Shown here: positions 1,310 to 63,225 of the stretch, piece by piece
Layout of the letters: the number at the start of each line of letters is the position of its first letter
Numbering within the stretch: position 1 is the first letter of the stretch
Assembly: GCF_902652985.1 (NCBI RefSeq)
Contig: NC_047022.1
Span: forward strand, 20,584,001 to 20,648,000
Direction of reading: 5' to 3'
Length of the DNA: 64,000 bases
DNA from: Pecten maximus
Taxonomy: Eukaryota
The notes under the pieces: model-generated
What the model was told of the DNA's origin: nothing
What the model saw: only the letters and a program-made list of their open reading frames with translations
Database searches by the model: none
Position numbers and translations under genes: made by a program

Positions 1310-4300
1310 CTACAACATTGGTACAGAGTTCCCACAGTCTTTTATATCAATGCCACCTCGTCCTGTAAGATTAAACCAGAACAGTTGTTTCCAGGTTAAA
1401 TCCGCTGAACGTTCCGAGTCTCTGTAGATTTCCACAGCCCTCTCATCGGCTGGAATCCATCGTGGTGTGTATCGTGCGAGGTGTTTGATCCGCTGAAACA
1501 AGGAAATAGATCATATCTGATTGAACTGTGCTTCTAATGTTAAAATAACATCTTCATTACAGACATTAATCTGGTGAACACTGTGTGATGTCGGGCAAGG
1601 TATTCCATCCGCTAAAACGAAGAAAACATATCTTATTTAACTGTGATACTATCATGACATAACATCTTTGTTGCAGACTTCGTGTATATATATATATATG
1701 CTTGAAATTGCAAGCAAACAAATCATAATGTGCGTTACGATTTGTTTGCTTGCAAAGCTCTGGCATTCAAATAGATCACAAATACCATACAAAAACAGTT
1801 CAATGCTTAAATAACCTTTTAACCTCTATCAATCTATGCAATAATCTGCATTGTCATTTATAATTCATTAATAGAATGGATATGTCGTGTTATAATAATT
1901 TTATATAATTTTGCAATTAAATACATACTAAAAATCGACGAAACGTTAATGCGTGCATTTCACAATGCACTTTGCCTGTTAAGTATGTACATATTATTCT
2001 TATATAGTTAACATACCATATCAAAGTGCTACAGGGAAAAACAAGTTTCCTTAAAATTAAATAGTCGTCCTAAAATGATTTTAGATAACACATAAAAAAT
2101 CAAAACGAGAAATAATGATTAGGCATTTTTCAGTAAATCTGGCACGTTGTGGATAACAACAATTATGAACCATTTTCACGGTATTGTACGGAGCCCGTTG
2201 ACTGACATGCTACACACTTATTTTATTTCGTTATATCGAAATGTTATTTCGTTTTATCGAAATAATAACTCGTTTCATCGAAATGTTATTACGTTTTATC
2301 GAAATATTATTTCGTTTTATCGAAATGTTATTTCGCTATATCGAAATATTATTTCGTTTTATCGAAATAATAATTCGTTTTATCGAAAAGTTATTTCGTT
2401 ATATCGAAATGTTATTTCGTTTTATCGAAATAATAATTCGTTTTATCGAAATGTTATTTCGTTTTATCGAAATAATAATTCGTTTTATCGAAATGTTATT
2501 TCGTTATATCGAAATGTTATTTCGTTTTATCGAAATAATAATTCGTTTTATCGAAAAGTTATTTTGTTATATCGAAATGTTATATACAAATGGGTTCCGT
2601 TGTTTATCTGTCCTTCCGTCTGTCTTTCCGCATGATATCTTTTGAGGGAATGATAAGATTTTTATGAAACTTGTAATGTAGAGTTATTACCTAAACCTCT
2701 CATTAAAGTTAGATTATCGTCATATTGCGCACATATTTAATGAGGCTGCTTTGACCTGATTGGCTTTAGGCACAATATCTTTTGAAGGAATGATTAGATT
2801 TTAATGAAGCTTGCTTAGTAGACTCATTGCCTAAGTCCCTATAGTTCGATTATCGCAATATGTAATGATTCGAAATGCTATGTCCTGTGTTTTATGTTTT
2901 TATGCATGTTGCCCATTTATTTTCATGTAATGCAATATTTGAATGGGCGTGGGATCTTGACAACTGTCATTGTCCTCCATCATTTGCTTGTTAAGTTGTA
3001 TAGTGCTGCAATAGAGTTGAAAATTGATTCCTATAAATACTTTTTCTTATAAAGGGTAATTGTTGAAGAAATTGAACTGTGATCACATCCACCATTGTAA
3101 CTCTGTTATAATATTGGCCCAGTTTCATCAATATTCCTTAAATACTTTATGTAAGAAAGTTTCTTAACAGAAAATTGTCCGTAGGAAAACATTACAGACG
3201 TGAAGGATTTTTCCTTAAGAGTTTTTCCTAAATCATGTAATGCTTTTCTTTGGAGAATTTTAAGTACAGGACTTTCCTGAAGTTCAGAAATATTGATGAA
3301 ACCAGAGCCAATTAGTTTGTCCTCCTCCAATATCTGTTTGGATATGTTATTTTTTACATTAATGTTTTATCTGTGTTCCTTTCTGAGTGTCAACAAATGA
3401 TCGCAAGTGTTGTTGCTGTTTGATCATCTTGTCACAGAGCCGTGAAGAACATGGATAATACCACTCTGTCTTAAAAGGCATGGTCACCTATTACATGTAC
3501 ATTACATACTACACATGGTATGATATGACCAGGAGTATAAATATTATAAGTCTGGTCTCTCAGCAGTCATTACATGTCAATTATTTTGTATATGTTATCA
3601 ATTTTTCATTCAAGTTTTTATGTTGTTTTAGAGTCACCAACTTTAGTTTTAATAATGTTTTACTTTATGTATTTTCGCAGTGCGTATTGTTTTTTACACT
3701 GTAAAATCATGTTATATTTCGACAGTGTTTATATATAAAAATGAATGGTGATGTTCTGATTGATATTTAATTGCAAAAGAAATAACGTGACTTGGAACTA
3801 ACAATATCATAAGAACACTTTTAGAGGAAGTCAGTGACTCAAAGTTTCATAAATTCCCATAACATAGCTTTACATGCATGTAACTTTTAATGATTGACCT
3901 AAATTGTATAGGTACATTTGACATTGTATCATTTCAAGAGTACATAAAGTATGATAGTCCTTTTCCAACCTGCTTCAAGTAGATGTTTATTTCAAATTTA
4001 TTTTCAACTGATCTGTATTAATAAAAATGGAAATCATTCTTATTTGTCTATACTTGTGATTTAACGAAATCAGCTGATTTTGTCTTTTCATCCCGAGACT
4101 TCTTATTATACTGGAATAATTGTTTGCGGTGTGTTAATGATAAAAAAGATGTAATAGCAAATAGCAATACAAGCAGAATCCAAAAATTCTGCTGTTACAT
4201 CAAGGTCATATTTGAGCCACCATCATGAAATGTTGTGCTATACAAATGGCCCTTCATCGTTGGTCCATCTTCCGTCTTTTAACATTTGTCTGTTGTGTGT

Positions 4301-7300
4301 TGTCACCAATCAACACGATCACATTAGTATTAACATATCTATTTCCTCAAATAATCAGATTGGTTTGTGTGTCAGACTGTGTGTTTAGGATGACAGCCAC
4401 AGCGACCACTTTTAACATGATTGTGCAATCTTTTAAACCTCTAAAAAGTTCCATCAGTGGAATTAAGCTCAAATGTACCTGACCACTGCATTGTTATTTT
4501 TCTGAAATCCAAGATGGCAGCTAAAACCGCCATGCTGTAAAACATATTTTAATCTTCCTTCAGTTCCACTAATGCAATTGATCTGGAAAGTGGTAGGTAA
4601 TAAAGTAAAGTGTTATCTTATAACATTGTTGCGTAATCAATGTTACCACCGATGACAATTCTTTTAAGTTCTACCAGAGAAATTTATCTTGAACCTATTT
4701 TGAAAGGATCCTGCAATGGTCCTTACCAAGTGTTGGTATTTTATCAAACTGTTTTGAAATCCGAGGTGACTGCTATCTTGGAGTAAAAAATCGTTACCTG
4801 AGACGAAGTCTCAAGTGATCTAATCGTCCTTTGTCCGTCCGTCGTGCGTACTTAAACAATTTACATTCGCCTTCTCAATATATGTAAAGCTCTGAAGCTG
4901 ATATTGAACCGTACCATTCTTGAAAAAGCGGCTACCAAATTTGTTCAAATGAATGTCATTGACATTTATTCAAGATCATAGTGGCCAAATAGGCTAAAAT
5001 ATTTAACTTCCTCTCAATATCCAAGAGACCAAGAGAACTGATATTGGGTCTGTAGCATGCTGGGATAAATGGCCTCACAGTTTGATCAAATGATCACTTT
5101 GACTTTGACCTACTGTTCTACGTACAGTACTTTAACCCAAATTATTTTGCGCGAAAATCCATCAAGACATCCGTTGATGCAAATTCCATATTGACGCAGC
5201 TTGTCATAAGAATCAAAATGCCATATGTAATTTGACCCTTTTGAACAACAAAGTCGTCTCCTGAGTTTATGTTTTGGGCGAAGTTATGTTCCTTCTTGGT
5301 CCAAAACACCCATCAAAATGATTACTTCCTCCTTCCTTGCATTGATCCTATGACTCCATTTTTTGATACATCCAGTGATATCCATGCATTTTTCCTGATC
5401 CTTTATGTTCAGATTGTATAAAATCTACAACGTCCATAACGTCTGGTCCATGTTTATACCTGTACAAACCTTCACTGTGCAATATCCGTATCAGCTTTCT
5501 ACTACTGAGGCTCAATCCATGTTATGCTTTACGATCAAACAAATTTCATCATGCTTTAACCCTAATGAGAAATAATTTATCAACACCTCCAAACCAGAAT
5601 CTGCCATGACAAAACATGTAGACTACAGGACAAAATGGTATTTCGATAAAACGAAATAACATTTCGATAAAACGAATTATTTTTTTGATAAAACGAAATA
5701 ACATTTCGATAAAACGAAATAATATTTCGATATAACGAAATAATATTTCGATAAAACGAATTATTATTTCGATAAAATGAAATAACATTTCGATAAAACG
5801 AAATAACATTTCGATATAACGAATTATTATTGCGATAAAACGAAATAACATTTCGATATAACGAAATAAAATAATTGTGTAGCATGTCAGTCAAGGGGCT
5901 CCGTAATATTGCAATGTTACGGCATGGATGTTTATTTTTTACAGTAAAAGATTATTCATAATTGATCAAATCACATCAATATATTATTGGTATACCTGTC
6001 CAAATGGTCCTTCCGCTTTCACTATGACCCACACAGAATAGCCAAGAGCTGGTAATATGGACGCCATTGTAAAACACCATCCTATAGCCCGCGCATACAC
6101 AGGATAGTTATAGTCTCCAAAGGACGGCGGCTTGTATGTAAAGACACTGATCACGAGGAGGCACTGGCAGAAACATAACAGTACATATCATTATCAGAGC
6201 AGAATTAACCTAGGTTTGAAATTTTAAAACGCCAATTATTCATTAATCAATCATAAATCAAACTGTGCTTGTAACCCGTATAGATCAACAATAGAATTCA
6301 ATCTCGGATATCATCTATAAAAGTGTTCAGCGATGAATTCATAATTCTCTTCCGATGTAAGTTCAAGGAAATATTCACAAGTATTTTGTTTTTCCTTCAA
6401 ACATAAAAAAAAAGGTACAGGTTTTACAGGTGTGAGGTAAAGCACTGTTTGATTGTTTTTCATGCAGGAAAATCAGAATGATTTTTGTATTTTGAATGAA
6501 TGGAATAGCGTTGCCAAAGTGATGTTTTCTTTTCTGTTCTTTTTTACCATCATTATGCCAACAGATTACTCGGTCATAGTATTTTCCGAATTGCCGATTC
6601 GACACCCCTACAAAATTACTTTGGACTTATGAAACCCTACATTAAAATTTCATTTTAAAAGTCATTCTTCAGTCAAAGTTACATGAACTAAAATAGATAC
6701 CGTAAGAAAAACAGGCATAATGAAGGCTGTACTTATACGGACAATGGCGGGAAGTGGCCGGTTGAGCATCAGGCGGACATCACGATCTATCCTGTGTGTA
6801 CCTGTACATAGTAAATAAAATCCTAGCCAATCGCCAATTTACATTCCTTTGAAAGTTTATGTTCAAGAATGCACAAGACCACTAAAACAGTGAGTGTGAG
6901 AACACCGTTCAATAACTCGTAACTAAGGTTTAGAGATAATCATAGCCATTATAACTTTAGCACCGTCATATAACACAAAATCAAAACGTAACTCATTAAC
7001 TGATTATTTTTGACCGATGAAATATTGACATGAATAAACTTGATTGAAGTACAAGAAAAGATGACCAGTTATTGCTTGATCTGATTCATCATTGAATCCG
7101 CCATGTAGCATCAATATTTATCAAGCAAGTGTCTCTGCGTTCTAGAAATGAACATTGGATATTCAACAACAAAATTGTGCAAGTGTTTTTCAGAACAGTT
7201 TGATATCATAATACATTATGTCCGGCAAAATTATAATCCTTCAACATATCAATCAACTCTGTTATATAGTTGTCATAATATCCAAGAGACGAGAATGGGC

Positions 7301-10300
7301 GAGACTATCAATTTCTCTGGATTTTTAACATGTGCTTCGGCAGATGTGCTGTCATAAAATTCCAGATTATTATCAACGCCAAATAGACATCTAATTAAAT
7401 AATTCTTGATTCTGGTACTTACCATAAATCCAGGCAAACATGATACACTCGGCCATACATATCAACATGACACTCCAGGTTCCGGTGTACCAGTCCACCA
7501 GCAGAAATATGTAGACGCCAGCCTATTAAGAACACAGACTAATTTTTAGGTATTTGTCTTATTGCATTCGTGTAGAGTTCCTAATTTATCTAAAAATAAT
7601 TATACCAATGCACTTGGAATTCAAAAATCATGTCTACATGGTTTATGATTACAGGTAAGTATATGGATAAAATTTACAGTTTTCGAACATAAATATACAC
7701 TAAGGATACGCATACGTCGTTACTGGGTGTCATATACCAATGTCCTTCAAAGAAATTCCTCACTTCACTCTCTCTGTTCAAACAGGTAATAAGATACCAC
7801 AGCGCCTTGTTACAACGCAAAAACATCACAATAGCATTGCAAATGAAAAATTGTAAAACAACTCGACAAGAATTGAGCGTGTCAGGCACTGACAGATGAT
7901 CTGCACTCTAGTGACATAAACAGAGGATATCTAACAGTGCCTTCAGTAAAACAAAATTTATTTCACGAGTGGGGCTGTTATTTTGATATTTTAGCACGTT
8001 AGATGTTCTGTTAATTGCATTTTTATAGCAAAATCGGGGCAGCTTTAAAATTCTTCCATTGTCGTTTGTAAGCAGTGTTTTAATTGGTCGAAAAAGTAAT
8101 TTCTTTACTTGTGTTATTAAGCAATGACTGAATGAGTGACGAACAATCAAGCGAGGTCTGCGGTTAGCAAGCAAATAAAGAGTGTAAAGTGATTAAAACA
8201 AGAAAAAGCGTAAGGGACTTAAAGTATTCATCCCCCAAAATAATATTGTATAGGCATCAAGAGAAACATCAGTACAGAGTGAACAACACTGTTTACTGGA
8301 CTATTTTCCTTTTTTGTTTCGCTAACTAAAAGTGCTGGGATAAGAATGCATCCAAAAGTGCACTATTCGCTGAAATACTTTACGTTTACGTCATGACAAA
8401 TTCGATACCAAAATTGTGATTCCGAAAAAGGATTTTGATAGAAAACAAATAAACAAAAATACAATCTATACATTTGTTGATAAGTTAATGTAAGAAATTA
8501 TTGAATGAATCCTGAATATTATTGTTACTCATGCTTTCAGCAATACCGATTGTATTTAAAAGCCTAATTTTCGCAACGACAATATGTAATATTTTAGATA
8601 ACTTACCTTTTCAATGAGTTTGTTGAACGATCTATCATACTAAATGGTATTTACCTGTGTAGCGAGAGGCAAGCTAAGAAGAAACATCACAAAACTGACA
8701 ACAGCCAACAAAAGGATCCTTCGATTTTTCAATAGTTTCGGGAATATTTCCTCTAAGATCATCAGAAATGGTTCTGTAAGTGTCGCCTGCAAAAGTATTC
8801 ATATAACAATGTTAATATCTAAACGAATTGAATATTAAAAGAAAACATTGATGTCTGGAAATAACAGAACATTGCATTAGACAAAATGATATTACTTTTC
8901 TTTAAATCATTGCTAATATTGTTCAGTTAAACCTAATCAAATATTTCAGAAGGCATATACCATAGCTTCATTTATTGATATTACTCTAATTACCATGGCA
9001 TCCAACCCGGGTAGTAGAATTAGGAAGTAAAAGATGGCACACCAAAGTTGGGGTAAGGGGAAATAACTCAATGCCTTGGGATAGGCTATAAATCCAATGG
9101 AAAAACCACCTAAATGACAATAAATAAAAGAAAAAGGTTTATCATCAATATATGAATATTACCATATTGGAAAACAGTATTGCTAACATGAAAGTTATAA
9201 ATTGGGTAAAAAGGAGAATTGGTGCTAGTAAAACAGCTGACTGTCATGACTCTTGAAAAGAATGTCTAATCTAAAGAGAGGTTTGACATTTTTATAATAT
9301 ATAGAGGATATTGAATGGTTTCCCGTTTAATATAACATATATTTCACGAGTTTTCTTTTTATTGCATTGTATATGCTTAAAAACAAATGTAAAAACATCG
9401 AAAAAATCAATAGTGTCGAAAAGTGCGGCAATCAGTAACATAATTCATGATGTCATCTCTTTGTGACGTTACTCCACGTTAACTTGACGGCTCCATTTTG
9501 AAAGAACTGATCAACGCAATTCAAGCGTTTTCTGCTGTTATCGGAGAATCTGTTTATGAATAGGTAAAGTCAAGTGATTATTTTGTCAAAAACTATTCTG
9601 AATTTTTCAGAAATACAGCAAAATAACCAGTCTATCTATATTCGCTTCGATCGGGAAAATCGGCAAGTTTCAATGAGGTAAATACAAAGGTTCACCCTGA
9701 TTAATCAAAACGAAAAACTTATATTTTCACTGCCAAAGTTATATTTACACTGCACAATCTTATATTTTCACTGCTCATTGCTGCAGAGAAAATATAAGTT
9801 TTATTAGTTTCATAAATGTCGATATATTACTGGCAAAAATGCAATACATTGTATATAAATATAATCGCTTTATTGGAAATTATGTATCTAGGTCACTAAT
9901 GATTCAGCAATGCAGATTCGTTACAAATAAGATTGCATATCTAGACATTTTAACTACCTGAGGTCATCATATCAGCGATTGGCACACCGATCTCCTCTGA
10001 CATCACACCAAGTACGGAAAACACCACGAGGCCATTGACTAGTCCAAAGGTCAAGGTCGCCGTTGTTGATATTATCGACGATCTGTAATGTATTTATTAT
10101 TTATCGGAACCAGAGATTATTCTTGTAATGCAATTCATTAAAGTTATAAAGAGGATATTCACTGTTTCTTGATGAATAAGTTATATTTTCACCGAGTGGG
10201 ATGAAAAATCTGCCGCATTACATATCGGATTACATTCTGAGGACAGTAGAAGCAAACTCATATTGTAGAGACTGGGTTTCCCGTGGAGTTGTGTATGATT

Positions 10301-12839: not shown

Positions 12840-12880
<41 letters not shown>

Positions 12881-16902: not shown

Positions 16903-16980
16903 CTTGCCTGTAAGTTTATTTCTCACCCGCTTCCTTTAGAATGTTTTACCTTCTGACATGCGGAGATCGTATATATAAAG
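16903..16980 (-). promoter_or_regulatory. Candidate TATA promoter and short non-coding first exon of SLC6-A
   Basis: Minus-strand TATATATA at ~16970-16977, a strong donor AAG|GTGAGT at ~16902, and an acceptor CTAG just 5' of the SLC6-A ATG exon (~14452). No transcript data. Confidence 0.4.
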
Positions 16981-19460: not shown

Positions 19461-19610
19461 CCTATCAAACATTTGATACGGCACGCACATGAGTGCCAAT
19501 GACATCTACAGAGACTCGGAAAGGTAGGCGAAATTTACCTTGAAACAAACGTTCTTGTTTAATCTTACATGACGAGACTGGACTATTACGACGCTGTATC
19601 AATTCTGTAG
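19461..19610 (+). pseudogene. Relic terminal exon of a third SLC6 paralog
   Basis: GACATCTACAGAGACTCGGAAAGGTAGGCGAAATTTACCTTGAAACAAACGTTCTTGTTTAATCTTAC aligns to exon 14 of B (33040-33108); preceded by a CAG acceptor and ending in TGTAG like the intact stop; contains internal stops and deletions. Confidence 0.85.
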
Positions 19611-21923: not shown

Positions 21924-24900
21924 ATGAGTGAGAATAATGCGGTGAGCGTGAAATGGACATCCCGTGTTGAGTTTGTTGTAGCGTTGCTAGGATATTCCAT
22001 CGGATTGCCGGAATTCTGGAGAGTACCGTACCTTACGTACAGGAACGGAGGAGGTAGGCATAGAACCATAAATTTCTTGTTGACAGTGGGCGACAACAGT
22101 CAAAACAGGATACTTTAATGTGTATGGCCACCCCGAAAGCATTTTTTTCAAAGATGCTAATACGTCTATAACGATTATCTTTTTGTCTTTAATATTGTAG
22201 GTCCCTTCGTTATCGCCTATATCCTACTGATGTTGGTTTGTGGACTTCCATTGTACTTCCTTGAGATAGCTCTATCTCAGTACTCTGGCAAAGGACCCTG
22301 GAGGTTTTGGGACATCTGCCCGTTACTGAGAGGTATTAATAACAGAAAATACGCTGCACGAACTAAGGCGAAAATATCATATTATAGACATCAGCAATTT
22401 AAGTAAAAAATATGTTGGAACATAATTGTTTATGTTTATCTAATTATCACCGTCGAATATATTGTAGTTGTAGTTTTACCACTTAAATTTCGGTACATTT
22501 ACAACCATCTCGATTATCTAATTACTAAATTAATTAAAATCTAATTATTGCACCAAAGCCTTACCTGTGTGCCCTTGTATGACTAGGATAAGCAGCGTTG
22601 GTTAACATGAGAAGAAACGTAGTTGACTGACCTGTCATGCTTTGTTGATTAGCATTCGTGCCTATCTACAGATTTCCAAACTAGCGACACAATGTTTGTG
22701 ACTTTATTGGTGTGAAATAGGTCTACGTAGGGTAGATACCATCCGTTCCGACCTATATATTAGTAGCACTTTCGTAAATGCATGCTATATAAACTGTCGA
22801 AAAAATATTAATATATTTTCTATAAGATATAATTACTGAATTTTCTATCAAACTTGATATTCATTATATTATCACTTAAAATCATATCTTGATAAGACGA
22901 TTGAATACAAACACATCGTCCGATACCCACGGTTGATTGCACGACGCTACGCTACACGTAATAAGTGAAACGTGCAATCAACCGTGAATGTCCGATGATG
23001 AGTTAGATGTAGTCAAATCGACATAGACTTTGTCGTCAAAATGGCATTTTTATAGGTCCATTAAGTAAACTGGCATTTACCACAACAAACAGAGGCCCAT
23101 TTATATTTCCGTACTGAAGCAATAATCTGATATTCGGAAATCGTTTCATTATATTATAGCTTGTTATCCGATATAACGTGTTAGTTTTAATTATTTTCTC
23201 CAACGAAAATAATATTATCCAAAACGGATTTCCTAAGAGGTAAACTGTATGTCCATTCTAAGCGATACATTAATACATAATAGACTATTTATGCATATTA
23301 ATCTCTAGACTATGACTGTTCGGTTTGTCGAAAGGATACCCTCCTGCGTGAGGGCAGCTCATTGTGTTTTCAATTTTTTTCTTGAGCAATACAAATATTT
23401 GAACCTGAAAAAAAAAAGAAAAAGAAAAATAACAGAACATCACAATAAAATAAATATTGATTAACAGATTTTGTTATACATTACACAAAGTCTATGCTAT
23501 TCACATATTAGGGTGTATGGTTCAAGCAAGCAGTAGCAAGCCCTTGTGATTAGTGAATCTGAGAAGCATCTGCATATATATAGTAAATGTGCCCTATTAG
23601 TTTAACTGACGTCATACGGAACTCTTCAACGTCTGAGTTACGCAAGTTTTAAGACAAATCGCCTCCAATTAAAACATGAAATTATTGGTCAAAATATACA
23701 CTTAACAGTATATTAGTAATATTAATGACATATCACCAAAATTCGCACCTTGATTTATCAGTGGAACTACACTACATAACTATGTGGATGGCCTCATTTT
23801 TATTCAACTGACCACATTTATGACATACACCTGCAAGTCATTATGACTCAGTCGTCTCATGGTAATAATTAATCTCATATAATAAACAGTTTCCCAATAT
23901 TTTGGAAACTTAATACATAATTTCAATAACTGGGGTGGAACTAACTTTGCATGTATGAAAAACAGCATAAATACACATCTTGTTGAACCATACCTTTTCT
24001 TCGTACCCATGCACATTTTTAACTTTAGTTTTCCCCTTTCTGGCACAACCTTATTTCTGCAGTATAGAACTATACATTAACTGATTGAAAGTAATTGAAA
24101 ACAAAAATAAACAACTTTAATATCAACTTACAATTATGCATTTTATTGAACGTGACTGATCTAATAAGGATTATAGTATGATTACTGCTGACGTGCAGAT
24201 CCATGTGACGTGCACATCCATATACAGCTCTTATTGCCTCATCAACAGGAATGGGAATCGCTATTGCAGTCATCAATGGCATAAGTGCCATTAACAATGC
24301 CATCATGGAGGCCTGGGCATTAGAGTATTTCGTGAACTCGTTTAAGGCGGTTCTGCCGTGGACTAACTGTGACAATGACTGGAACACCCCTGCATGTTAC
24401 AGGGAGGGAGCACGTACAATTGCTGAAAATATGTCTTTGTACAATTTTACTGGAAACTACAGCATGACGGTAAAGTATAGTTTCAATTACACAGTCATAA
24501 TTAACTAACATCATTTTTCTATCTGTTCTTCATTTCTGTGATTTGCGTTCTCCTATCTCATTGCTGAATATAAAAATAATATTCTTGTTCGTATTATGCT
24601 TCTGTTATCTGCTGCTTCCGCTAGGTGTAGGTCATTTAAGAACATCACTACTCGTCAGAATACTGTTAGCATATTTATTTTAGTGCACTTTAATTTTAGC
24701 GCCTTAACATGTTTTTTCATAATAATGCAATGATGAATTATCGCATCAATATTAAGTTGTAAAATAAGTTTAGAAAAATAATGTTGTTTAGAGAAATCTT
24801 TCAAAGTCAAAAGGATTAAGATATATTATCACTAAATTGTAAATTTTAACAGTTCCGTCCTCTGATGCCTCTGGCTGCTGCATAAAACTCCTAAAACAAA

Positions 24901-27900
24901 AACGATTAACTGTAATACTATCCCATGCTCAGGGAGTTATCATACACAATAATGGACCCCGAGAAACCTTAAAACTAGTGTATAGCGGATGTAGTCTAGA
25001 TTAACTGTTTAGTTCTTAACAATGTGTCGGTCAAGCTAAGCATTTTTTATCAAAAATTTGTGATAAAGAAATATGCATTGTCTGTTTTTTGATATGTTGA
25101 AACGGGAATAGCAATTCCTTCAGTAGTCAACTCCCTTCGGAATTTCCAATTGAATTTATTGTCAGTAATCAACATACTATCTTAACGATTATCATAATAA
25201 AACACATATTATCACATATATCTAGTATACTTTAAAATAAAGCAGCTATTGTTTGTTTGCCTTTATGTTGTTGATTATTTTTAATATTTAGTGGCATGAC
25301 TACGCTTTTGTTTTCCATAGACTTCAGTGTTAACATTTTGTTTGATATCATTAAAATTCTTGAATTCAATATGAAAATTACGGTTTTGGGTCATTCAGCT
25401 CAAACCTTACCCAGGGTAGCCATTTTGAAAATGGGTGGATTTCGCAATGAAAATTTTCAAAATCTTATTTTTACCTGTTATTTGTAATGACCTGAACTTT
25501 TGAGGGAAATTAATCAATTGGACTTACAGAATTTTATATCAACATTACATATGGGTAGTTACCTATCAGGCTACATATCTATTTTGGAACTTCATAATAT
25601 ACTAGCCACTCAGTGGCTGCCAAACTTTTATCCCTGGCTCAACTTTCAATAAACAGGGGATGTTTCAAAAGTCTATTTTTTTCAATTGGTTGGTTGTTCC
25701 CTAATAGAATTAATATTCCAGTTATCTTCAAGCACATAAGTTTGTCCTGACTTCATCGTCAATTTAGTTTCAGTAAAAAAGTTTTCTGTAAATACCATTA
25801 TAACATTATAAAATTGTATAGGAATGTCGTTCTGATTAATCTCTTTTTACCTAATACTACATTCATGATTGTTACTTTAAGAACCTGACGTCCTGGGCGA
25901 CAAATCCAGACCAGAACGGAACCATTCACCACCCGGTTGATTCTGTGGCCGAGTTTTGGTTGTAAGTTTATACAATATACATGATTAAACATATTTACAC
26001 AGAAAAACTACAAAATTATATTTAACCACTATAAAATATCCTTCCAAATTCATTGATCAACATTTTCTCTGAATAGTTGATTATAATACAAAGTACTATT
26101 TGAGTAAAAGGGTTTATGTTATTGCCTTAGCTGTGTTATTTATATGCAGCAGAGCTCTTTTTAATGCTATCTAAGATAATGTGTACAGCAAATGAATAGA
26201 CCGATTTTTTCCTTTAACAGATTTCGGATTCTGAAAATATCTAACGGGATTAATGTCTTTGGAACCGTCAGCCTGATATTTGTGCTTTACCTATTCGTTA
26301 TCAGACTTATCGCCGCCGCCAGTATTGCAAAAAGCGTCGCAAGTATGGGAAAGGTATTCACACGCACAGTACTCTTTTCAATAAATACCAATCAAGGAAT
26401 TTAGTACAAAAAATAACAAATAGTCTGAAATATTTTTGTTTGGTATTTTTCTAATGCTTCCGTGGTGGTCGCCAATCTTGCGATCTCTATGGTGGAATGT
26501 GACTTAACCTGGATTTGACCCAGACATAGAAGACGTTAACCCTTTCGTTACACCCTGGGCCCGTTTTCATGAAATCATTCACATCCGTAAGTAAACATTA
26601 TGTGCTCAAACTCAATCTCTATCTTTTATGATTTGGAAAAAGAATAGGATATACTTAAATGAAACGAGATAATATTTTGCAAGTTCATGATTTTAACGAA
26701 TTTAAAGAAAGTCGGTTTAAGCACAGAATTCATGCATGTTAAGTATGAGAGTTAGAATAGTTTCATGAACACGGCCAATGGTCTTATTCTTCCTACTTTT
26801 TCAATAATATCAATGTATATGCATATTTTATTCGTTTCATGATCCAGTTTTATCAGTTTTGAGTCAGAATTACATTTTCGTGATTATATTGGTATTCTTT
26901 ATCATTCATGCATTAAATGCACAATTAAGAGATATATGTAGTAAAAGTCACTCTCAGCTTAAATGTCCATTGATTGCTAAGTGTATGCTACATTGGCTTA
27001 GTTACTGTTAGTCATTGGACTTTATTGATTTTATTGTTGTTATTGTTGGAATTTTATGTATTTAGAACAGATATAACAAGATAATATCACCTTTAATTAA
27101 ATGTAAGTTAAACGATATTCATTAATGCATTATATATCGATTTCTGCACATACAACCGAGGTGGGATACAGGAGCTGTTTAGTAATTGTAATAATAATCA
27201 CCAATGGTGTAGAAATCCGAAAGGAAAATCAGGGAAATTTATTGACATGAACATTCTATTGTTATAAGCCAGTATTGCATTGCAGTCCTCAGGAATATTA
27301 ACCTCTGTATCTTACAGGTATTGTATATAACAGCACTTCTACCCATGGTTTTAGTCCTAGTGATCTGGATCCGAGCTCTGACATTACCAGGGGCAACAAA
27401 AGGGATGTTGTATTTTGTATCGGCTGACTTCAGTAGGTTTGCTGACTCACAGGTGATACTTCATTTTTAATTGATGATAGATATATACTTTGTAATTAAT
27501 AGTTTCCAACAGTATTTAACGTACATTTGCCTTATAGCCATATCAATGGAAATAAGTTATTGATAATTGTGTTTATTGCTATTCCATCATATTATTCCCT
27601 GATAAGATAATTGTTCATTTATTACAAAATACGTATTATGATTTGTTCTAAATGACACTTCCTCAGAGAAAATAGTAAACATAGCTCGTCTAGTCAATCA
27701 AACGCGACGTTAAAAAGGCGACGTCCTTTTCATGTCCTTTGATGCTTTAACCAATTCAAATAGGGCTAAATCATGTCGTTTTAGCTGTGGATAGAGGCCT
27801 CATTTCAAACGTTCCTAACTCTCGGTCCAGGCTGGGGAGGACTAATGATGATGGGTGCACACAATAAATTCCGGACAAACTGCTTCCAGTATGTTTTATT

Positions 27901-30900
27901 ATTAAGATAATAATTGTGTAGCAGATATTTCACCCGAATATTTATTTATTCATTCATTTTGATGTACTTAGAGTATTTTTTTTTTATTCCTTTGTGTTTT
28001 TATTTTGAAGTGTTCATGCTCCATCGATAATTGAAGCCAACAATGTTTAAATTTATTCTTAAATTCCAAAATTATTTTGCAATACAATTAAACATCAGAA
28101 TGATTTGATAAAATGTCTGCCATCCTTACCATATCACATTCTTGAAAATCCAAGCGCGTTGAAAAAAAGGTCTAATAATTATATATATATTTGTAAGCCA
28201 TATCCAGTTTTAAACTTTGACTCATTCAAGAGACAGTCTAATACTTGCTTGTTTCGACATATGTTTTGTTATTTCGAAGCAATGCATTATTGAAATGCCT
28301 TTCTGAAGTTTTCATAGTTATTGCATAAATTTACCTTCCAGATCAGCTACCATATCAACAACTGCGACCTTGACCTTCGGATTAGTCAATGGCCTCATAG
28401 TGTTTTCGGTGCTTGGTGTGATGTCAGAGGAGATTGGTGTTCCTATCTCAGACTTAATGACCTCAGGCTAGTTATTTTTGTCAAATACCAAGCAACTTTT
28501 ATTTCTTAATATCAAATAATCATATTGAAAGTGATTCAATGTCGAAATTGCTATTTACATAAGGCAATTGTGTTTTATAACAAATAACATATTAGATGTA
28601 ATTAAGTAGAAGCTGTCAAAGGACGTCTGGACAAGTTATAACTTCTTTTAGACAGTTAAAAAACGCATATAGAATATTTTACTAATGTCCGTAAGCCTGA
28701 ATTTTTCATGTACCCAAAATTACTATGTTTATTTTGTTTTGTTTTTTTGTTTAGAAATTAATCATTCTAGCTAACACGACCCTAGTTGCGTCACAACAGG
28801 TTTTCGTATGTCCAATTCGTTGCCAACGTATATTGCGCCTACTAAGCCACTGTGTGGTTTCATCCGTTCTTACATCGCGATTCAAGCGTTTTTATGGACA
28901 ACAATAATGTAACATACGATAAGCAGTATTTTGTTTGCATTAACCAAATGGGGAAATTCTTTTCCCGATATACGTCCGTCTTCTGTATGCCTCGAGAATC
29001 GTGCATTTATTTTGTAGCCCTCCTTGTAAGAACAAAATCGCGTGATAAATGTATCGACCAATGGAAAGATAGGTTGATGCTTCCGAAGGGATATAAAACA
29101 GTACAGGACACCCAAAGGCTTTGCAACTTGTCCGGAATACCTTTTAGGTTAAAGTTAAAGTTTACATTTGTTTAAACATATACGTAAATAAGTAAATGTT
29201 TATACGTTCTTCTTATTTCTAAACTTTACTTTAAATATAAAATTGACGAATGACTCTCCTTTGCGTTTTTAGGTGGTTTTTCCATTGGATTCATAGCTTA
29301 TCCCAAGGCCCTGAGTTATTTCCACTTGCCACAAACTTAGTGTGCTATCTTTTACCTGGTCATTCTACTTCCGGGGTTGGATGCCATGGTAACAAGCGTT
29401 TGTATCAACACGTACATGTATTTATAGCACATGTCATCCTAATAGTGTTTGCTCTTAGGGTTTTATCAGTCTGCTCTATTTTTAAGTACATGGATTCTAA
29501 TTACTCTGATTGGTCATTGCTTGACAGCCGATTGGCCAAAGGATGAGTAAACTAAATTCGCAATAGAAATAATACGGAAAGAAGAGCTATAATATCAGAT
29601 ATTCGTTTGACAGTAAACAATATAGATATGCATTTAAAGACATATGTATATTTGATTGGTTTTGTCGCTACCTGGGACAATATCTTTGAAAGAAGTAAAT
29701 AGTTATTTGTTAATGATATACTTTTTAGTAGTATCTAAAATGCAAAACATCGGGGTTAGATAAAAACGAAGAAGCTAAAGAATTGTCATCTAATTGCAAT
29801 TGTATAATAATTTTAACCGTTGCGTCATATTCAAATGTATTTAAATATCAACATTGTTATGTAATTATTTAACAGGCGATACTAACAGAGCCATTTCTGA
29901 TGATCTTAGAGGAAATGTTCCCTAAACTATTGAACAATCGAAGGATTCCTCTGTTGGCTGTCGTCAGTATTGTGATGTTTCTGCTTGGCTTACCGCATGC
30001 TACACAGGTAATGTTCCTTTAGTAAGCGGGACAAAATAACAATTGTTAATCAACTTACATATGTATATATAGGTTGTGTGAGTGACTTTGCGCCAGATAA
30101 TATCAACATGTTTTGTTGGTTTTAATTTGTCACATTATTTTATACTGATTATGCTGCCTTCTATCAAGTGTTTTTTTATACACCTATTAGCTATAGCTAA
30201 GCTAACTACTTTGTATTCAAGTTATATATGTATATACAGTTTATGTATATTAGTGTGTGTGTGAAAGTTGTCTTTTTTTCTTTCTGGATCATGTGAATAC
30301 TTTATGACGAAAATCTGAATAAAAATGTCAAAAGTAAAATAAAAAAACAACAACCTAATACGTTAATCATTAACAAAATTAACCACTGCCAACTTTCCTC
30401 AACCACACACTCCATTACATACAGAAATACGGAAGGGCTCACATAGGACTATCAAAGGGGTGGGTACACTGGAATAAGTTTGTCCGTCCGTCTGTTGGTA
30501 TCGGGATCATGTCCGTACAACGCCTTCTGCAGCTTTGATTACAACTTTGTGAAACTATTTGGATTATAGTCATCACAAACCAGTGTATCTAGGGTTATTA
30601 TGGACCTGTTTAGTTAGCACATTACAATTGTGCATATTTAGCAATCTTGGTTACGCCTATCGTTTATTGCAATAATGTTCCTTTAACTATGTTTGTAGGC
30701 AGAATCTTGTCCTGAGAACTCTTCAATAACTCTTAAATATTGTGTAGTCAGCACAAACTGAAGGTGTGCAGCTGTGCTTACTGACTTGCATAACCTTCAC
30801 AGATATATCTCATTTCATATATCTGTAGAGGTTACCTTTCTTATTTTTTGCACATTTTATTCATATCTTAGTTAACATGTGATTTTAGAGAGTGAGAAAC

Positions 30901-33162
30901 GGGTTGGAGTTGGGAGCTTGGTGTATTGGTCAGACATCCCTGAGATTATACAGTAATGATTTGACATCTCCCGACATCTCCGATGAATCCTAGAAGGACG
31001 AAACGTCTGAATGTTGTCAGTGTAATCCATTCCTCTGCATTTGATTGAACTCTGAATTAATTTTGAAAAATGCTAATATCTTGTGTCTTTTTTTATAATC
31101 CTTTGAGATTGCAAGTGTTAGACACTACTGGTGGAATGTTAGTCCCCGCATTTTAATTCATTTTTGTGGTGACGCGGTTCGGAATATACACAATACATGT
31201 ACTTAACGTTTTGATATTTTAAACTAGGAAAATGATTGAATTATGAATCTTTTGCAACTACTCATTCAGATTTTGGCATAGCTTCCATTAGCATCACTAA
31301 CCTGGAACGAAAAAAGAACTGTATGGTGCAGTGCCGTTTGTTTTTTACTCTAAATGTGTTTTCAAATGTGATAATCTTTTGTCTTCTGTAGTCCTTATGA
31401 TAATATAACAAATTACTAAAACTATTTTTCTCACTGCTGATTTTAGTACAGTTCAATGTTTAATACTCCTGTTCATTTATGTTATAATAGGCCGGCGTCT
31501 ACATATTTCTGCTGGTGGACTGGTACACAGGAACCTGGAGTGTTATGTTGATATGTATGGCCGAGTGTATCGCATTTGCCTGGTTTTATGGTAAGTATAT
31601 ACCAGTTTTTTTCGAACGTTTTTTTTTAATTGACAGTGAAGAGTACGTCTTTATGCTATCGTTCGTCGCTTTTGATAACCCTATTTACTCCACAACATAT
31701 AAATGGCATGTATCAATTATTCCAGATTTTAGTTTAGTCGCCTCCTAAAATCAATTAAGCATCAATGGAAGACAAGTCCTAGAAGGACGAAACAAATATG
31801 AGATGGAATTCATTTTGGCTCCTCTGTATCTGGAAGGTGCTAATAATTTGCGTGTCTTTGTACAATCCTTAAAAACCATATCATCAGTCATTAATCAAAT
31901 TATATATCGTTCGAGACTTACGCTGCATTTGATTGGCCGCAATTGAGGATATACCTTTATTGGAGTATGATGAAGAGAATCAAGTTTAAACCCTGTATCA
32001 GAAAAATCAAATAAACTTTACAGGTACACACAGGGATAGATCGTGACGTCCGCCTGATGCTCAATCGACCACTCCCCGCCATTGTCCGTATAAGTACAGC
32101 GTTTATTATGCCTGTTTTTCTCACGGTAAGTAAGGTAATCACTACACTCTTACATTAGTTCATAAATATATGAATGCAATACAGTTTCATATTAATAATA
32201 ACAGTTATGAGATCATTCAAAATGTCTATAGTCCCGTGTCATAATCTATAAAACAACTTTATAAATAAGTTAAGTGTAACATCGCTTATGATTTTGCCAA
32301 TAAAAAAAACAGTTCGATTCTTAAAGTTTATACGGTTAAAAATAAAGGTATTTTTCAATAAAACCTATTGGTGTGATAATAGCAGTTGCCTTCAAAGACG
32401 ACTTGAAGGACTTTGCAGCATGCAATAGATTTGATAAGTTTTGGTTTCGACAGGGTGAAACATTAGTTATGTTGGTTGAACTGCAATACGATTCCCGCAA
32501 AATTACCGAAATTTTCGGAATAAATTATGCTTAATTAATGATGGTTTTGTTTCCGCCAGTGTCTCCTCGTGATCAGTGTCTTTACATACAAGCCGCCGTC
32601 CTTTGGAGAGTATAACTACCCTGTGTATGCCCGGGCTATAGGATGGTGTTTTACAATGTCTTCCCTATTACCAGCTCTTGGTTATTCTGTTTGGGTCATA
32701 GTGAAAGCAGATGGACCATTTAGACAGGTAAGCCCGTAATGTACTGGTGTTATCGATATTTACGAATAATTTTGGTATCAGCCTTATTTCCTTTTTGAAA
32801 TGCATTACTTTTCCAATACAACTTAATTTTCCAAAGTCGGCTTATGCATGTACGGTTCAAATTAATTCGTGCCCAGTAAGTCAGACTTCAAATCCTCAAA
32901 CTTTGACAGGAACGCAGAATATCGGATTATAATTAAAGGTCTTGTTTTTATCAGATCGATGTGTGTGTCTACGTTTCAGCGGATCAGACATCTTGCACGC
33001 CACACAATGCAGTGGGTTCCAGCCAGTGTGAATGTCGAGGACATCTACAGAGACTCGGAACGTTCAGCGGAATTTACCTGGAAACAACTGTTCTGGTTTA
33101 ATCTTACAGGACGAGGTGGCATTGTTATAAAGGACTGTGGGGACTCTGTACCAATGTTGTAG
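21924..33162 (+). CDS. SLC6-family transporter, paralog B; 14 coding exons, ~619 aa; disrupted as assembled (recent pseudogene or consensus errors)
   Basis: Exons: 21924-22053, 22201-22332, 24249-24469, 25882-25961, 26221-26353, 27318-27452, 27785-27888, 28342-28466, 29273-29388, 29876-30007, 31491-31590, 32024-32125, 32560-32727, 32980-33162. Same intron positions and phases as A. Lesions: GC donor AG|GCTAGT at 28467; in-frame TAG at 29338-29340 where A has TGG; extra G at 32033-32035 (exon 102 nt against 101 nt). Confidence 0.9.
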
Positions 33163-62351: not shown

Positions 62352-63225
62352 GGTGTCTTGGCTAGAACATCAGTTCTACGTCTGGTCTGAAAAAGAAATA
62401 AACAAAAACGTTGAACTTGCAATATATTAGATTGAATTAGCTTCCTAAGTTATTTTATGAACTCCAGGACCGCACACTTCCTCTGCTACAAACTGGATAA
62501 TCATGTTACATGTATCTAAACATTTACGTACAACATCATTACTGGGGAACAGTTTCCGGAACACAGGCTTAAAATGAAAATTTATCTATGGACGTTTTAC
62601 TACCATTTATAAATAGATAAGTTCAGCTAATTACACAGCGTATCCTAGGTTACACGGAAACTACTTTCCAAATTGTTTTTCACACGAAGGTAACCAGACA
62701 GACAGAAAGCAAATGTTGTTATATACAATGTATTATTTTAGGGTATGCAATAGTATAGTAGCTTTGGAAAAGGCAAATAAAAAACTTATCTCTTACAAGG
62801 ATATATACAGTCTATGGAACCGATACAAATAAATAAAAATACTTAAATATGAAACAAAATATAAAGAAAACATTATTGGTAGGGGTACTGATAAAGATAA
62901 ATTAAAATGACGAAATATAAATAATTTGTTGGTAGGCGCAAATTATTGGTAGTACAACTGGATAGATCATTGAATGTCGAAAGTGTATGGACGGTGCTTG
63001 TCACAAAAATGCATAAACTTACCTAAATGGTATAGAAATATATCTAATAATCAACACCATCAAATGACATATTAATGATGATACCATGTTTTAAATTGTA
63101 GCTTCTGACACCAAATGTTACATATTGAGGCGTTACAAGTTTATTTATCCACTTTAATGTAATAAATATTCGAATTTTTTAAAGAGTGTTGATAGCGTAG
63201 AATATAATAAGCATTGTACACAATT

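What the first reader, a model, noticed from the sequence alone, without database searches (positions are those of the whole stretch)
1310..33162. SLC6 pair with rewired ion sites and eroded gates: a possible non-canonical transporter, channel or sensor subfamily
Seen in both paralogs, using human SERT numbering from a manual motif alignment. TM1 reads GYSIG(T/L)PEFWRVP instead of G.AV(G/D)LGN.WRFP, i.e. G100>P and Na1 ligand N101>E. TM3 Y176>T (A) or N (B). TM6 reads QTFLT, i.e. gate F335>L, with W at the F341 position. TM7 N368>T and Cl- ligand S372>G. TM8 reads LPGLDAM, i.e. L434>P and Na2 ligand S438>A. The intracellular gate has R79>S and Y350>H (GAHN in place of ASYN). Retained: R104, the TM10 acidic partner, Y121, Q332, D437 and the EL2 disulfide. 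Established: these residues form Na1, Na2, the Cl- site and both gates in LeuT, SERT and GAT1. The changes are shared by two copies that otherwise differ largely at synonymous sites, so they are not random decay. Inference: altered coupling (the TM1 Glu might substitute for the Cl- charge or bind a different cation), uncoupled or channel-like flux, or a transceptor role.
Basis: partly seen in the sequence, partly recalled or inferred. Interest (0 to 1): 0.8.

Follow-up and report, generated by a model that had tools for sequence, protein, structure and literature searches.

The report
Scallop SLC6 transporters with rewired ion sites
Two neighbouring scallop genes belong to an old, conserved, bivalve-only branch of the SLC6 transporter family in which an acidic residue replaces the asparagine that normally bridges the sodium and chloride sites; these proteins probably work without chloride, although in this assembly both copies carry reading-frame defects.

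Summary
Two head-to-head, 14-exon SLC6 genes lie at 1310-14440 (A, minus strand) and 21924-33162 (B, plus strand).

This is not decay. A and B differ with dN/dS 0.19. The same residues occur in eight paralogs of this genome and in full-length proteins of three other scallop genera. An Asp or Glu at N101 defines a well-supported clade that also holds clam (Venerida, Myida) proteins.

Caveats:
- Both copies are broken in this assembly. A has one extra base in exon 6, but an A-locus contig from an independent DNA run lacks it.
- B has an in-frame TAG, an extra G and a GC donor. It is probably a young pseudogene.
- W at F341 and H at Y350 are ordinary in the mollusc relatives, so "eroded gates" is overstated.

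Most likely these are working, chloride-independent, cation-coupled transporters whose TM1 carboxylate supplies the charge that Cl- or a TM7 acid supplies elsewhere. The loss of the carboxylate-binding Gly and Tyr hints at a different substrate class. Function and expression are untested. I rate it a new variant of a known kind, of moderate interest.

The parts
1310..14440 (-). Gene A, a 14-exon SLC6 gene of the PE type. Exons: 14440-14314, 13960-13829, 13516-13293, 12376-12297, 12167-12035, 11444-11309, 11173-11070, 10082-9958, 9109-8994, 8786-8655, 7522-7423, 6801-6701, 6163-5996, 1492-1310.
   Evidence: Exon model with AG/GT at every junction. It gives 619 aa after removal of one base. The NCBI-named protein P0179 (459 aa, Pecten maximus) matches exons 1, 3 and 7-14 at 97-100%.
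21924..33162 (+). Gene B, a 14-exon SLC6 paralog facing away from A. Exons: 21924-22053, 22201-22332, 24249-24469, 25882-25961, 26221-26353, 27318-27452, 27785-27888, 28342-28466, 29273-29388, 29876-30007, 31491-31590, 32024 (or 32034)-32125, 32560-32727, 32980-33162.
   Evidence: No protein of the collection matches B. Its best hit is P0154 of Ylistrum balloti at 82%.
14314..14440 (-). A exon 1: start codon, a very short N-terminus (9 residues before the conserved Trp) and TM1 with Pro-Glu in place of Gly100-Asn101.
21924..22053 (+). B exon 1: the same TM1 with Pro-Glu.
13293..13516 (-). A exon 3: TM3 without the conserved Tyr pair (T,T), and the start of EL2 with both disulfide cysteines.
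24249..24469 (+). B exon 3: TM3 with N,N at Y175/Y176, and the EL2 cysteines.
11070..11173 (-). A exon 7: TM6 with Q332 kept, F335L, S336T, F341W and Y350H. B's counterpart is 27785-27888.
9958..10082 (-). A exon 8: TM7 with N368T and S372G. B's counterpart is 28342-28466.
8994..9109 (-). A exon 9: TM8 with L434P, D437 kept and S438A. B's counterpart is 29273-29388.
   Evidence: The exon alone finds nothing in the PDB sequences.
7423..7522 (-). A exon 11: TM10 with the Asp that aligns with GAT1 D451, the partner of R104. B's counterpart is 31491-31590.
11356..11357 (-). One extra base in A exon 6, a frameshift in this assembly.
   Evidence: A 934-nt contig of the independent DNA run X4 (11185-12119, 11 mismatches, 1 gap) lacks it. 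No paralog is more than about 80% alike over that stretch.
29338..29340 (+). In-frame TAG in B exon 9 (codon 376), where A and all relatives have Trp.
32033..32035 (+). Run of three G in B where A has two. This is a frameshift if the acceptor before 32024 is used. Starting at 32034 keeps the frame but drops three residues.
28467..28468 (+). GC instead of GT at the donor of B intron 8.
2187..5905 (.). Foldback-type insertion in A's last intron. Two inverted arrays of a 21-bp tandem repeat (2223-2583 and 5640-5869) flank about 3 kb. This explains why the intron is 4.5 kb in A and 0.25 kb in B.

Best explanation
A and B are members of a bivalve-specific subfamily of SLC6 (neurotransmitter:sodium symporter) proteins. 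The subfamily nests inside the mollusc expansion of GlyT-like amino-acid transporters.

Shown:
- The subfamily is defined by an Asp or Glu at the TM1 asparagine that in SERT binds Na1 with one side-chain atom and Cl- with the other.
- It has also lost the TM7 serine of the Cl- site, and has Thr at S336 and His at Y350.
- The scallop PE group, to which A and B belong, additionally has Pro at G100, no TM3 tyrosine and Thr at the Na1 ligand N368.
- The group has a very short N-terminus and a conserved C-terminal tail that is modelled with high confidence.
- The fold, the R104/TM10 gate pair, D437, the EL2 disulfide and an Arg-Ile pair just after TM12 are kept. That pair sits where, from memory, the SLC6 ER-export motif lies.
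- The genes evolve under purifying selection.

Inferred:
- These are working carriers that bind a cation at a remodelled Na1 site and probably at Na2.
- They need no chloride, because the TM1 carboxylate sits where the Cl- charge acts. This parallels Glu290 of LeuT and the TM7 Asp of KAAT1 and B0AT-type transporters.
- Sister clades carry that TM7 Asp. The fixed charge therefore seems to have moved from TM7 to TM1 during the history of the clade.
- Pro at G100 removes a backbone NH, and the TM3 Tyr hydroxyl is gone. From my recollection of the LeuT and GAT1 structures, both bind the substrate carboxylate. The PE group therefore probably takes a solute without an alpha-carboxylate at that spot.

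At this locus, A has an intact allele in the population. B is most likely a recently inactivated copy in a tandem array that gains and loses members.
For: Conservation:
- Pro-Glu in TM1 occurs in 8 loci of this genome, and D/E at the same position in at least 20 of about 100 SLC6 TM1 exons.
- Full-length PE-type proteins exist in Pecten, Ylistrum and Argopecten, with partial models in Mizuhopecten. They share all the key residues.

Clade:
- 23 of 109 rows form one clade with SH-aLRT 100. It holds Pectinida, Venerida and Myida, and every member has D/E at N101 and G/A at S372.
- A sister clade has Asp at N368.

Selection:
- dN/dS is 0.185 for A against B, and 0.09-0.40 for all 28 pairs of the eight paralogs.
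- The core around TM1, TM2, TM6 and TM8 is nearly invariant within the group.

Fold:
- Pfam SNF covers residues 10-549 of P0154 at E 3e-131.
- The AlphaFold model of P0154 has pLDDT 90.9 and pTM 0.89, with broken TM1 and TM6 helices.
- Foldseek gives TM-score 0.95 and rmsd 1.6-1.9 A to occluded PROT, GlyT2 and TauT.

Mechanistic basis from papers:
- Ion-site ligands of SERT, including the double role of Asn101 (PMC12139788).
- A fixed negative charge confers Cl- independence, and KAAT1 D338 and the B0AT Asp lie at LeuT N286 (PMC8310414).

Other:
- An intact A allele is seen in an independent DNA run.
- One clam member of the clade (P0175) lies as an uninterrupted 643-codon ORF on a 2293-nt contig of a public run. 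That looks like spliced mRNA, although the run's library type was not checked.
Against: - No transport, ion dependence or localisation has been measured for any member, and I found no paper on the clade.
- I found no sign that A or B is transcribed. The one possibly-RNA run laid on A gave only repeat hits and two short unspliced contigs. No transcript-derived protein of the PE group is in the protein collection.
- Both copies are disrupted in the reference. Four of the eight PE loci in this genome carry lesions, and NCBI's models for A, G3, G4 and G5 are exon-skipping partials.
- The acid arose once on the tree. Its link with loss of the Cl- ligands is therefore one evolutionary event, not a replicated correlation.
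- Two Na1 ligands and one Na2 ligand are changed, so loss of ion coupling altogether cannot be excluded.
- The tree used a quick search, and sampling was limited to the best 120 hits.
Confidence: 0.5

Rival explanations
1. The proteins keep the SLC6 fold but no longer work as coupled carriers. They would act as a solute sensor (transceptor), a leak or channel-like pathway, or a partner of another protein.
For: Three of the side-chain ion ligands are changed: N101, N368 and S438. The N-terminal gate Arg (R79) and the TM3 Tyr are lost. The N-terminus is cut to about 9 residues, while a C-terminal tail of about 60 residues is conserved and modelled with pLDDT near 90-95. Such a tail could be an interaction module.
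Against: The binding-pocket helices are the most conserved parts of the protein. The model fits occluded, substrate-bound transporters at 1.6-1.9 A. D437, the R104/TM10 Asp pair, the acid at D452 and the Arg-Ile pair after TM12 are kept. Multi-copy tandem expansion with varied pocket residues is more typical of nutrient carriers. None of this is decisive.
Confidence: 0.2
2. Nothing functional is left at this locus. A and B are both pseudogenes, and the odd residues matter only as history.
For: In the assembly, A has a frameshift. B has a stop codon, a second frame problem and a non-GT donor. Neighbours G2 and G6 are clearly dead, and G4 has a frameshift. B has no protein model in the collection. 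No spliced RNA was seen for A.
Against: A's extra base is absent from an A-locus contig of an independent individual. dN/dS of 0.19-0.31 for A against its relatives shows constraint over nearly all of its history. The odd residues are shared with intact genes of four scallop genera, so they predate any decay. For B alone this reading is likely; I put it near 0.7.
Confidence: 0.1
3. Despite the substitutions these are ordinary Na+/Cl- dependent amino-acid transporters, as their automatic names say (glycine transporter 2-like, dopamine transporter-like).
For: The best sequence matches among solved structures are GlyT2 and GlyT1 (E about 1e-111 to 1e-105). Y121, Q332 and D437 are kept in the PE group.
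Against: N101 and S372 are both Cl- ligands, and N101 and N368 are both Na1 ligands. All are replaced, and a carboxylate is placed where the Cl- ligand nitrogen sits. The backbone NH of G100 and the Tyr176 hydroxyl are gone; from my recollection of the LeuT and GAT1 structures these bind the substrate carboxylate. The automatic names differ from copy to copy (glycine, GABA, betaine, dopamine, proline, creatine), so they carry no information.
Confidence: 0.1

Closest known systems
GlyT2/GlyT1/PROT/TauT-type eukaryotic SLC6 transporters (closest solved structures)
   Same: The Pfam SNF domain covers the full length. The proteins share a 12-TM LeuT fold with broken TM1 and TM6, about 30-33% identity and TM-score 0.95. 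Also shared are the EL2 disulfide, the R104/TM10 acid gate, D437, W at the F341 position, M at T439 and an Arg-Ile pair after TM12.
   Different: In TM1, Gly-Asn becomes Pro-Glu. The TM3 Tyr pair is lost. N368 becomes Thr, S372 becomes Gly and S438 becomes Ala. R79 is lost and the N-terminus is about 9 residues long. The C-tail is conserved and clade-specific.
Chloride-independent NSS with a built-in negative charge: LeuT (Glu290), Tyt1 and TnaT
   Same: A fixed carboxylate lies next to Na1 and the Cl- pocket, while the Ser ligand of Cl- is absent. The expected consequence is Cl- independence (PMC8310414). Possible proton involvement is my recollection and was not checked.
   Different: The charge sits on TM1 at the Asn27/Asn101 position, not on TM7 at the Glu290/Ser372 position. 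I found no described SLC6 with an acid there. These are animal proteins from a recent mollusc expansion.
KAAT1/CAATCH1 and B0AT-type nutrient amino-acid transporters
   Same: These are nutrient-type SLC6 proteins with an acidic residue inside the Na1 site. They show weak or no Cl- dependence and, for KAAT1, altered cation selectivity (PMC8310414). Sister clades of the bivalve clade, and its clam members, carry that same TM7 Asp.
   Different: In the scallop PE group the TM7 position is Thr and the acid is on TM1. The carboxylate-binding Gly and Tyr are also lost, whereas KAAT1 and B0AT keep them and carry alpha-amino acids.
Monoamine transporters (SERT, DAT, NET)
   Same: A TM1 carboxylate in the unwound stretch goes together with substrates that lack a carboxylate. 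This is an analogy from established knowledge of Asp98/Asp79.
   Different: Their Asp is three residues earlier, at position 98; here that position is Gly. Monoamine transporters keep Gly100, Asn101, Tyr176, Asn368 and Ser372. The bivalve clade is not related to them within the tree.

Membership tests
SLC6 / NSS (Pfam PF00209 SNF) | Match to the SNF profile above the gathering score | tested here: met
   A exon 1 scores 32.8 bits and exon 3 scores 46.5 bits (cut-off 27). Orthologs P0154 and P0155 score 439-440 bits over profile positions 3-520 of 524. The joined A and B models were not sent to any search tool.
SLC6 / NSS (Pfam PF00209 SNF) | LeuT fold: 12 TM helices with unwound TM1 and TM6 | tested here: met
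   The AlphaFold model of P0154 (77-82% identical to A and B) has pLDDT 90.9, with helix breaks at residues 26-28 and 292-296. Foldseek gives TM-score 0.95 to PROT, GlyT2 and TauT.
SLC6 / NSS (Pfam PF00209 SNF) | TM1 signature with Gly-Asn before Trp-Arg-x-Pro (Na1 ligand Asn) | tested here: not met
   Pro-Glu in A and B and in all PE-group members. The rest of the clade has x-Asp or x-Glu.
Na+/Cl- dependent SLC6 transporters | Cl- site ligands: N101, Y121, Q332, S336, S372 | tested here: not met
   Y121 and Q332 are kept. N101 is Glu, S336 is Thr and S372 is Gly. The ligand list comes from PMC12139788.
Na+/Cl- dependent SLC6 transporters | Na1 side-chain ligands: N101, S336, N368 | tested here: not met
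   They are Glu, Thr and Thr. The oxygen ligands may be partly preserved, because Glu and Thr can still bind a cation. That is an inference.
Na+/Cl- dependent SLC6 transporters | Na2 ligands: backbone of G94, V97 and L434, plus D437 and S438 | tested here: inconclusive
   D437 is kept, S438 is Ala and L434 is Pro, which leaves its carbonyl available. Sequence alone cannot say whether a cation still binds.
Na+/Cl- dependent SLC6 transporters | Extracellular gate salt bridge: R104 with the TM10 acid | tested here: met
   The Arg is present. The TM10 Asp aligns with GAT1 D451 and the GlyT2 Asp. It is Asn in three of the seven other PE-group members that cover TM10.
Na+/Cl- dependent SLC6 transporters | Intracellular gate: R79 with D452, plus Y350 | tested here: not met
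   R79 is Ser, Asn or Thr, and Y350 is His. The acid at D452 is kept as Glu, and a Lys at position 81 is conserved.
Cl- independent NAT/B0AT/KAAT1-like SLC6 | Asp at the TM7 Na1 position (LeuT N286, SERT N368) | tested here: not met
   It is Thr in A, B and the whole PE and TD groups. Asp is present in most clam members of the clade and in a sister clade.
Monoamine transporters | Asp at SERT position 98 in TM1 | tested here: not met
   It is Gly in A and B. The clade sits inside the GlyT-like mollusc expansion.
Working transporter (any coupling) | Measured solute flux and ion dependence | not testable with these tools
   No functional data were found in the papers searched.

The most novel reading that the evidence does not exclude
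In an ancient bivalve SLC6 clade the fixed counter-charge of the Na1 site has moved from TM7 to the TM1 asparagine that normally bridges Na1 and Cl-. In the scallop PE group this Glu, together with Pro at G100 and loss of the TM3 Tyr, takes over the place of the substrate's own carboxylate. The proteins would then carry a non-carboxylate solute (an amine, another cationic solute or a neutral osmolyte) without chloride, possibly with proton or potassium involvement. That coupling and substrate chemistry has not been described for SLC6.
Probability: 0.25. Interest if true: 0.65.

Novelty: new variant of a known kind. Interest (0 to 1): 0.5.

Why it matters
SLC6 transporters are a textbook case of ion-coupled transport, and the role of chloride in them is still debated. 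Here nature supplies an old, multi-gene series of variants. The negative charge sits on TM7 in some members, on both TM7 and TM1 in others, and on TM1 alone in the rest, and the chloride ligands are lost alongside.

Expressing a few of these proteins, and making the reciprocal changes in GlyT2 or GAT1, would test directly whether a carboxylate at the Asn101 position can replace chloride, and what it does to cation choice.

It also matters for annotation. These genes are named after glycine, GABA, dopamine, betaine, proline or creatine transporters, and those names should not be used to infer physiology in scallops. This includes toxin-response and osmolyte studies that already report "SLC6" genes (PMC8150855).

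Tried and rejected
I rebuilt the models from coordinates only.
- The joined A and B proteins were used only inside scripts, for alignment, dN/dS and the tree. They were never sent to a search, fold or collection tool. All searches were by single exon reference or with database proteins.
- The big representative search with A's exon 3 gave mostly short fragments and no close ortholog. Its use was that it yielded one full-length relative, P0066.
- A look-up of P0179's encoding contig found nothing on record.
- A word search with the C-terminal exon, meant to find spliced fragments, had no candidates.
- Exon 9 alone finds nothing among PDB sequences or in Pfam.
- RNA evidence for A: the only run guessed to be RNA gave repeat hits and two unspliced 151-nt contigs. 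Expression is therefore left open, not disproved.
Across nine PE-group sequences TM3 has average variability, and A is the outlier there.
- I first suspected that the TM10 Asp aligns one position off the gate acid. HMMER alignments to GAT1 and GlyT2 place it on the gate Asp.
- The short contigs of runs X1 and X2 that show a base change at 11357 together with the missing base read like the G3/G4 paralogs. I did not count them as A alleles.
- B's lesions could not be checked with reads, because the single read-laying run went to A.

Full report
What is there

The window is AT-rich eukaryotic DNA without N runs. Named database hits place it in the king scallop, Pecten maximus. The genome handle has 918,306,378 bases in 3,983 contigs, and the window is contig 8, 20,584,001-20,648,000.

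A blastn of the first 18 kb (reverse strand) against the next 18 kb gave 14 colinear blocks of 74-94% identity. From the block translations I set exon borders by coordinates.
- Gene A runs on the minus strand from the ATG at 14440 to the stop at 1310.
- Gene B runs on the plus strand from 21924 to 33162.
- All 26 introns have AG acceptors and GT donors, except B's intron 8, which starts GC.
- The two genes face away from each other across 7.5 kb.

The substitutions are real

I checked each motif exon by reference against solved SLC6 chains that carry native numbering.
- TM1 aligns without gaps to GlyT1 and to SERT 81-114. This gives G100P, N101E, R104 kept, W82 kept and R79S.
- TM3 aligns to SERT 161-213. 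The Tyr175-Tyr176 pair is T,T in A and N,N in B.
- TM6 aligns to SERT 325-356. Q332 is kept, with F335L, S336T, F341W and Y350H.
- TM7 aligns to hDAT 347-382, giving N368T and S372G.
- For TM8 the exon alone is too short. The full-length alignment of the ortholog P0154 to GlyT2, and the family alignment, anchor on the invariant Gly-Leu-Asp. They give L434P, D437 kept and S438A.
- The TM10 Asp falls on GAT1 D451 and the GlyT2 Asp, that is, on the partner of R104.

Two of the listed oddities are not odd. W at F341 and M at T439 are what GlyT2 has. His at Y350 is frequent in canonical abalone and other mollusc relatives.

Both copies are damaged in this assembly

Each raw CDS is 1861 nt, one base too many.

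Gene A:
- It has one extra base at 11356/11357 in exon 6.
- Laying four public runs on 6650-12420 showed a 934-nt contig in the independent DNA run X4. It covers 11185-12119 (exon 6, intron 5 and part of exon 5), has 11 mismatches and a single gap, and the gap is the missing base at 11356.
- No paralog is more than about 80% alike across that stretch, so the contig is an allele of A itself.
- The frameshift is therefore either a segregating allele or an assembly error. An open 619-codon A exists.
- NCBI's model for A (P0179, 459 aa) simply skips exons 2, 4, 5 and 6.

Gene B:
- It has a TAG at 29338-29340 where everything else has Trp.
- It has an extra G at 32033-32035, which a downstream acceptor could absorb at the cost of three residues.
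- It has the GC donor at 28467-28468.
- No protein in the collection corresponds to B.
- I could not check B with reads. I take it as a probable young pseudogene.

Not decay: selection and conservation

- A and B are 82% identical in protein, with dN 0.099, dS 0.536 and dN/dS 0.185.
- A search of the whole genome with B's TM1 exon found 101 SLC6 TM1 exons. Among the 30 I fetched, eight carry Pro-Glu. Six of these form a tandem array at 20.52-20.61 Mb of contig 8, which includes A and B. The other two lie at 11.38 and 11.49 Mb.
- Twelve more of the 30 carry x-Asp or x-Glu at the same place. The rest have the canonical Gly-Asn.
- I fetched the six other PE loci and mapped their exons. G3, G5 and G7 look intact; G7 is the 620-aa protein P0155. 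G4 has one frameshift. G2 and G6 have several lesions.
- All 28 pairwise dN/dS values lie between 0.09 and 0.40.
- A is closest to G3 and G4 (dS about 0.21), not to B. Per-exon identities are mosaic, which suggests gene conversion within the array.

A clade, not a pair

One full-length relative (P0066) came out of the representative search. Word searches seeded with it and with P0154 returned named proteins.
- Full-length PE-type proteins of 620-624 aa exist in Ylistrum balloti, Argopecten irradians and Pecten maximus, with partial ones in Mizuhopecten yessoensis. All share the PE motif, the missing TM3 Tyr, Thr and Gly in TM7, Pro-Gly-Leu-Asp in TM8 and His at Y350.
- In a tree of 109 full-length proteins, 23 rows form one clade with SH-aLRT 100 on a long stem. 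It contains the scallop PE, PE-TWK and TD groups, and "SD" proteins of Mercenaria, Ruditapes and Mya.
- Every member has Asp or Glu at N101, Thr at S336, Gly or Ala at S372 and His at Y350. All groups except the PE group have also lost Q332.
- Most clam members also have Asp at N368. A sister clade has Asp at N368 with a normal TM1. The scallop groups have Thr or Val there.
- The simplest reading is that a TM7 acid came first, a TM1 acid was added, and the TM7 acid was then lost in scallops. The order is an inference from a tree rooted on a single sequence.
- Scallops and venerid clams belong to the two main bivalve lineages, so the clade is old. That dating rests on my own knowledge of bivalve phylogeny.

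Fold

- Pfam SNF covers residues 10-549 of P0154, so there is almost no N-terminal tail.
- An AlphaFold model of P0154 built on an 81-sequence alignment has mean pLDDT 90.9 and pTM 0.89. It shows the usual breaks in TM1 and TM6, and a C-terminal tail with three helices modelled confidently.
- Foldseek places it on human PROT, GlyT2, TauT and BGT1. The occluded or inward-occluded substrate-bound structures give the lowest rmsd, at 1.6-1.9 A.
- Because typed or joined sequence may not be sent out, I folded a database ortholog rather than A or B.

How it most likely works

In SERT, Asn101 binds Na1 through O-delta and Cl- through N-delta. Ser372, Gln332, Ser336 and Tyr121 complete the Cl- site, and Asn368 and Ser336 complete Na1 (PMC12139788). 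Chloride independence in the family goes with a fixed negative charge near that pocket. Examples are Glu290 in LeuT and an Asp at LeuT N286 in KAAT1, CAATCH1 and B0AT-type carriers. In KAAT1 that Asp also shapes cation choice (PMC8310414).

A carboxylate at position 101, with Ser372 gone, fits the same logic with the charge on the other side of the site. I therefore expect cation-coupled, chloride-independent transport, perhaps pH-sensitive.

Pro at G100 has no backbone NH, and the TM3 Tyr hydroxyl is missing. In LeuT and GAT1 these two groups hold the substrate carboxylate; this is established structural knowledge that I recall and did not test here. The PE group thus probably does not bind an alpha-amino acid in the usual way. 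The parallel with monoamine transporters, where a TM1 Asp replaces the substrate carboxylate, is only an analogy.

What remains open

- No member has been assayed, and I found no paper on the clade. [quoted passage not shown]
- Expression of A and B is unknown.
- One clam member (P0175) sits as an uninterrupted ORF on a 2.3-kb contig of a public run, which looks like spliced mRNA. I did not check that run's library type.

Verdict

"Eroded gates" and channel or sensor roles are not supported but not excluded. The locus itself holds one gene with an intact allele and one probable recent pseudogene, inside an array that gains and loses copies.

Noticed in passing
window 2187-5905: A's last intron holds a foldback-like element of about 3.7 kb. 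Its ends are inverted arrays of a 21-bp tandem repeat (17 and 11 copies). B's matching intron is only 0.25 kb.
   Followed up: partly
G000 contig 8, 20.505-20.582 Mb (loci L031-L038), just upstream of the window: Four more PE-type SLC6 genes lie in tandem on the minus strand. G3 looks intact, G4 has one frameshift, and G2 and G6 have several lesions. A is closer to G3 and G4 (dS about 0.21) than to B, and per-exon identities are mosaic, which suggests gene conversion.
   Followed up: partly
window 13293-13516 compared with 24249-24469: In TM3, copy A alone carries four residues (Tyr, Thr, Thr, Thr) where the eight other PE-group sequences compared agree on Ser, Asn, Ile, Glu. The pseudogene G6 shares part of A's version.
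   Followed up: partly
window 1310-1492 and 32980-33162 (exon 14): The C-terminal tail has a motif (Thr-Trp-Lys-Gln-Leu-Phe-Trp-Phe-Asn-Leu-Thr-Gly) that recurs in looser form across the whole acid clade. AlphaFold models it as helices with high confidence. Its role is unknown.
   Followed up: no
window 7808-8193, 9159-9930, 10703-11088: Intron stretches of A attract contig depths hundreds of times above single copy in all DNA runs and in the possible RNA run. They are high-copy interspersed repeats.
   Followed up: no
window 34279-38132, minus strand: Open frames with tubulin-like C-terminal and GTPase-domain motifs. This is probably a multi-exon tubulin-family gene next to B.
   Followed up: no
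window 56520-57848, plus strand: A 442-aa open frame with Cys/His-rich B-box-like motifs, a coiled-coil stretch and a C-terminal repeat region, resembling the TRIM/NHL-like genes that are expanded in bivalves.
   Followed up: no
window 60598-62351, minus strand: Two open frames that look like a voltage-gated K+ channel: a T1/BTB-like N-terminal part, and a pore region with the Thr-Val-Gly-Tyr-Gly-Asp signature.
   Followed up: no
window 63154-63975: A long tandem repeat that is open in several frames at the right end of the window.
   Followed up: no
proteins P0179, P0246, P0270, P0275 (NCBI models of A, G4, G5, G3): Four of the five annotated PE-group genes of this genome are exon-skipping partial models of 385-459 aa, each with a different substrate name. 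These names should not be used for functional inference.
   Followed up: partly
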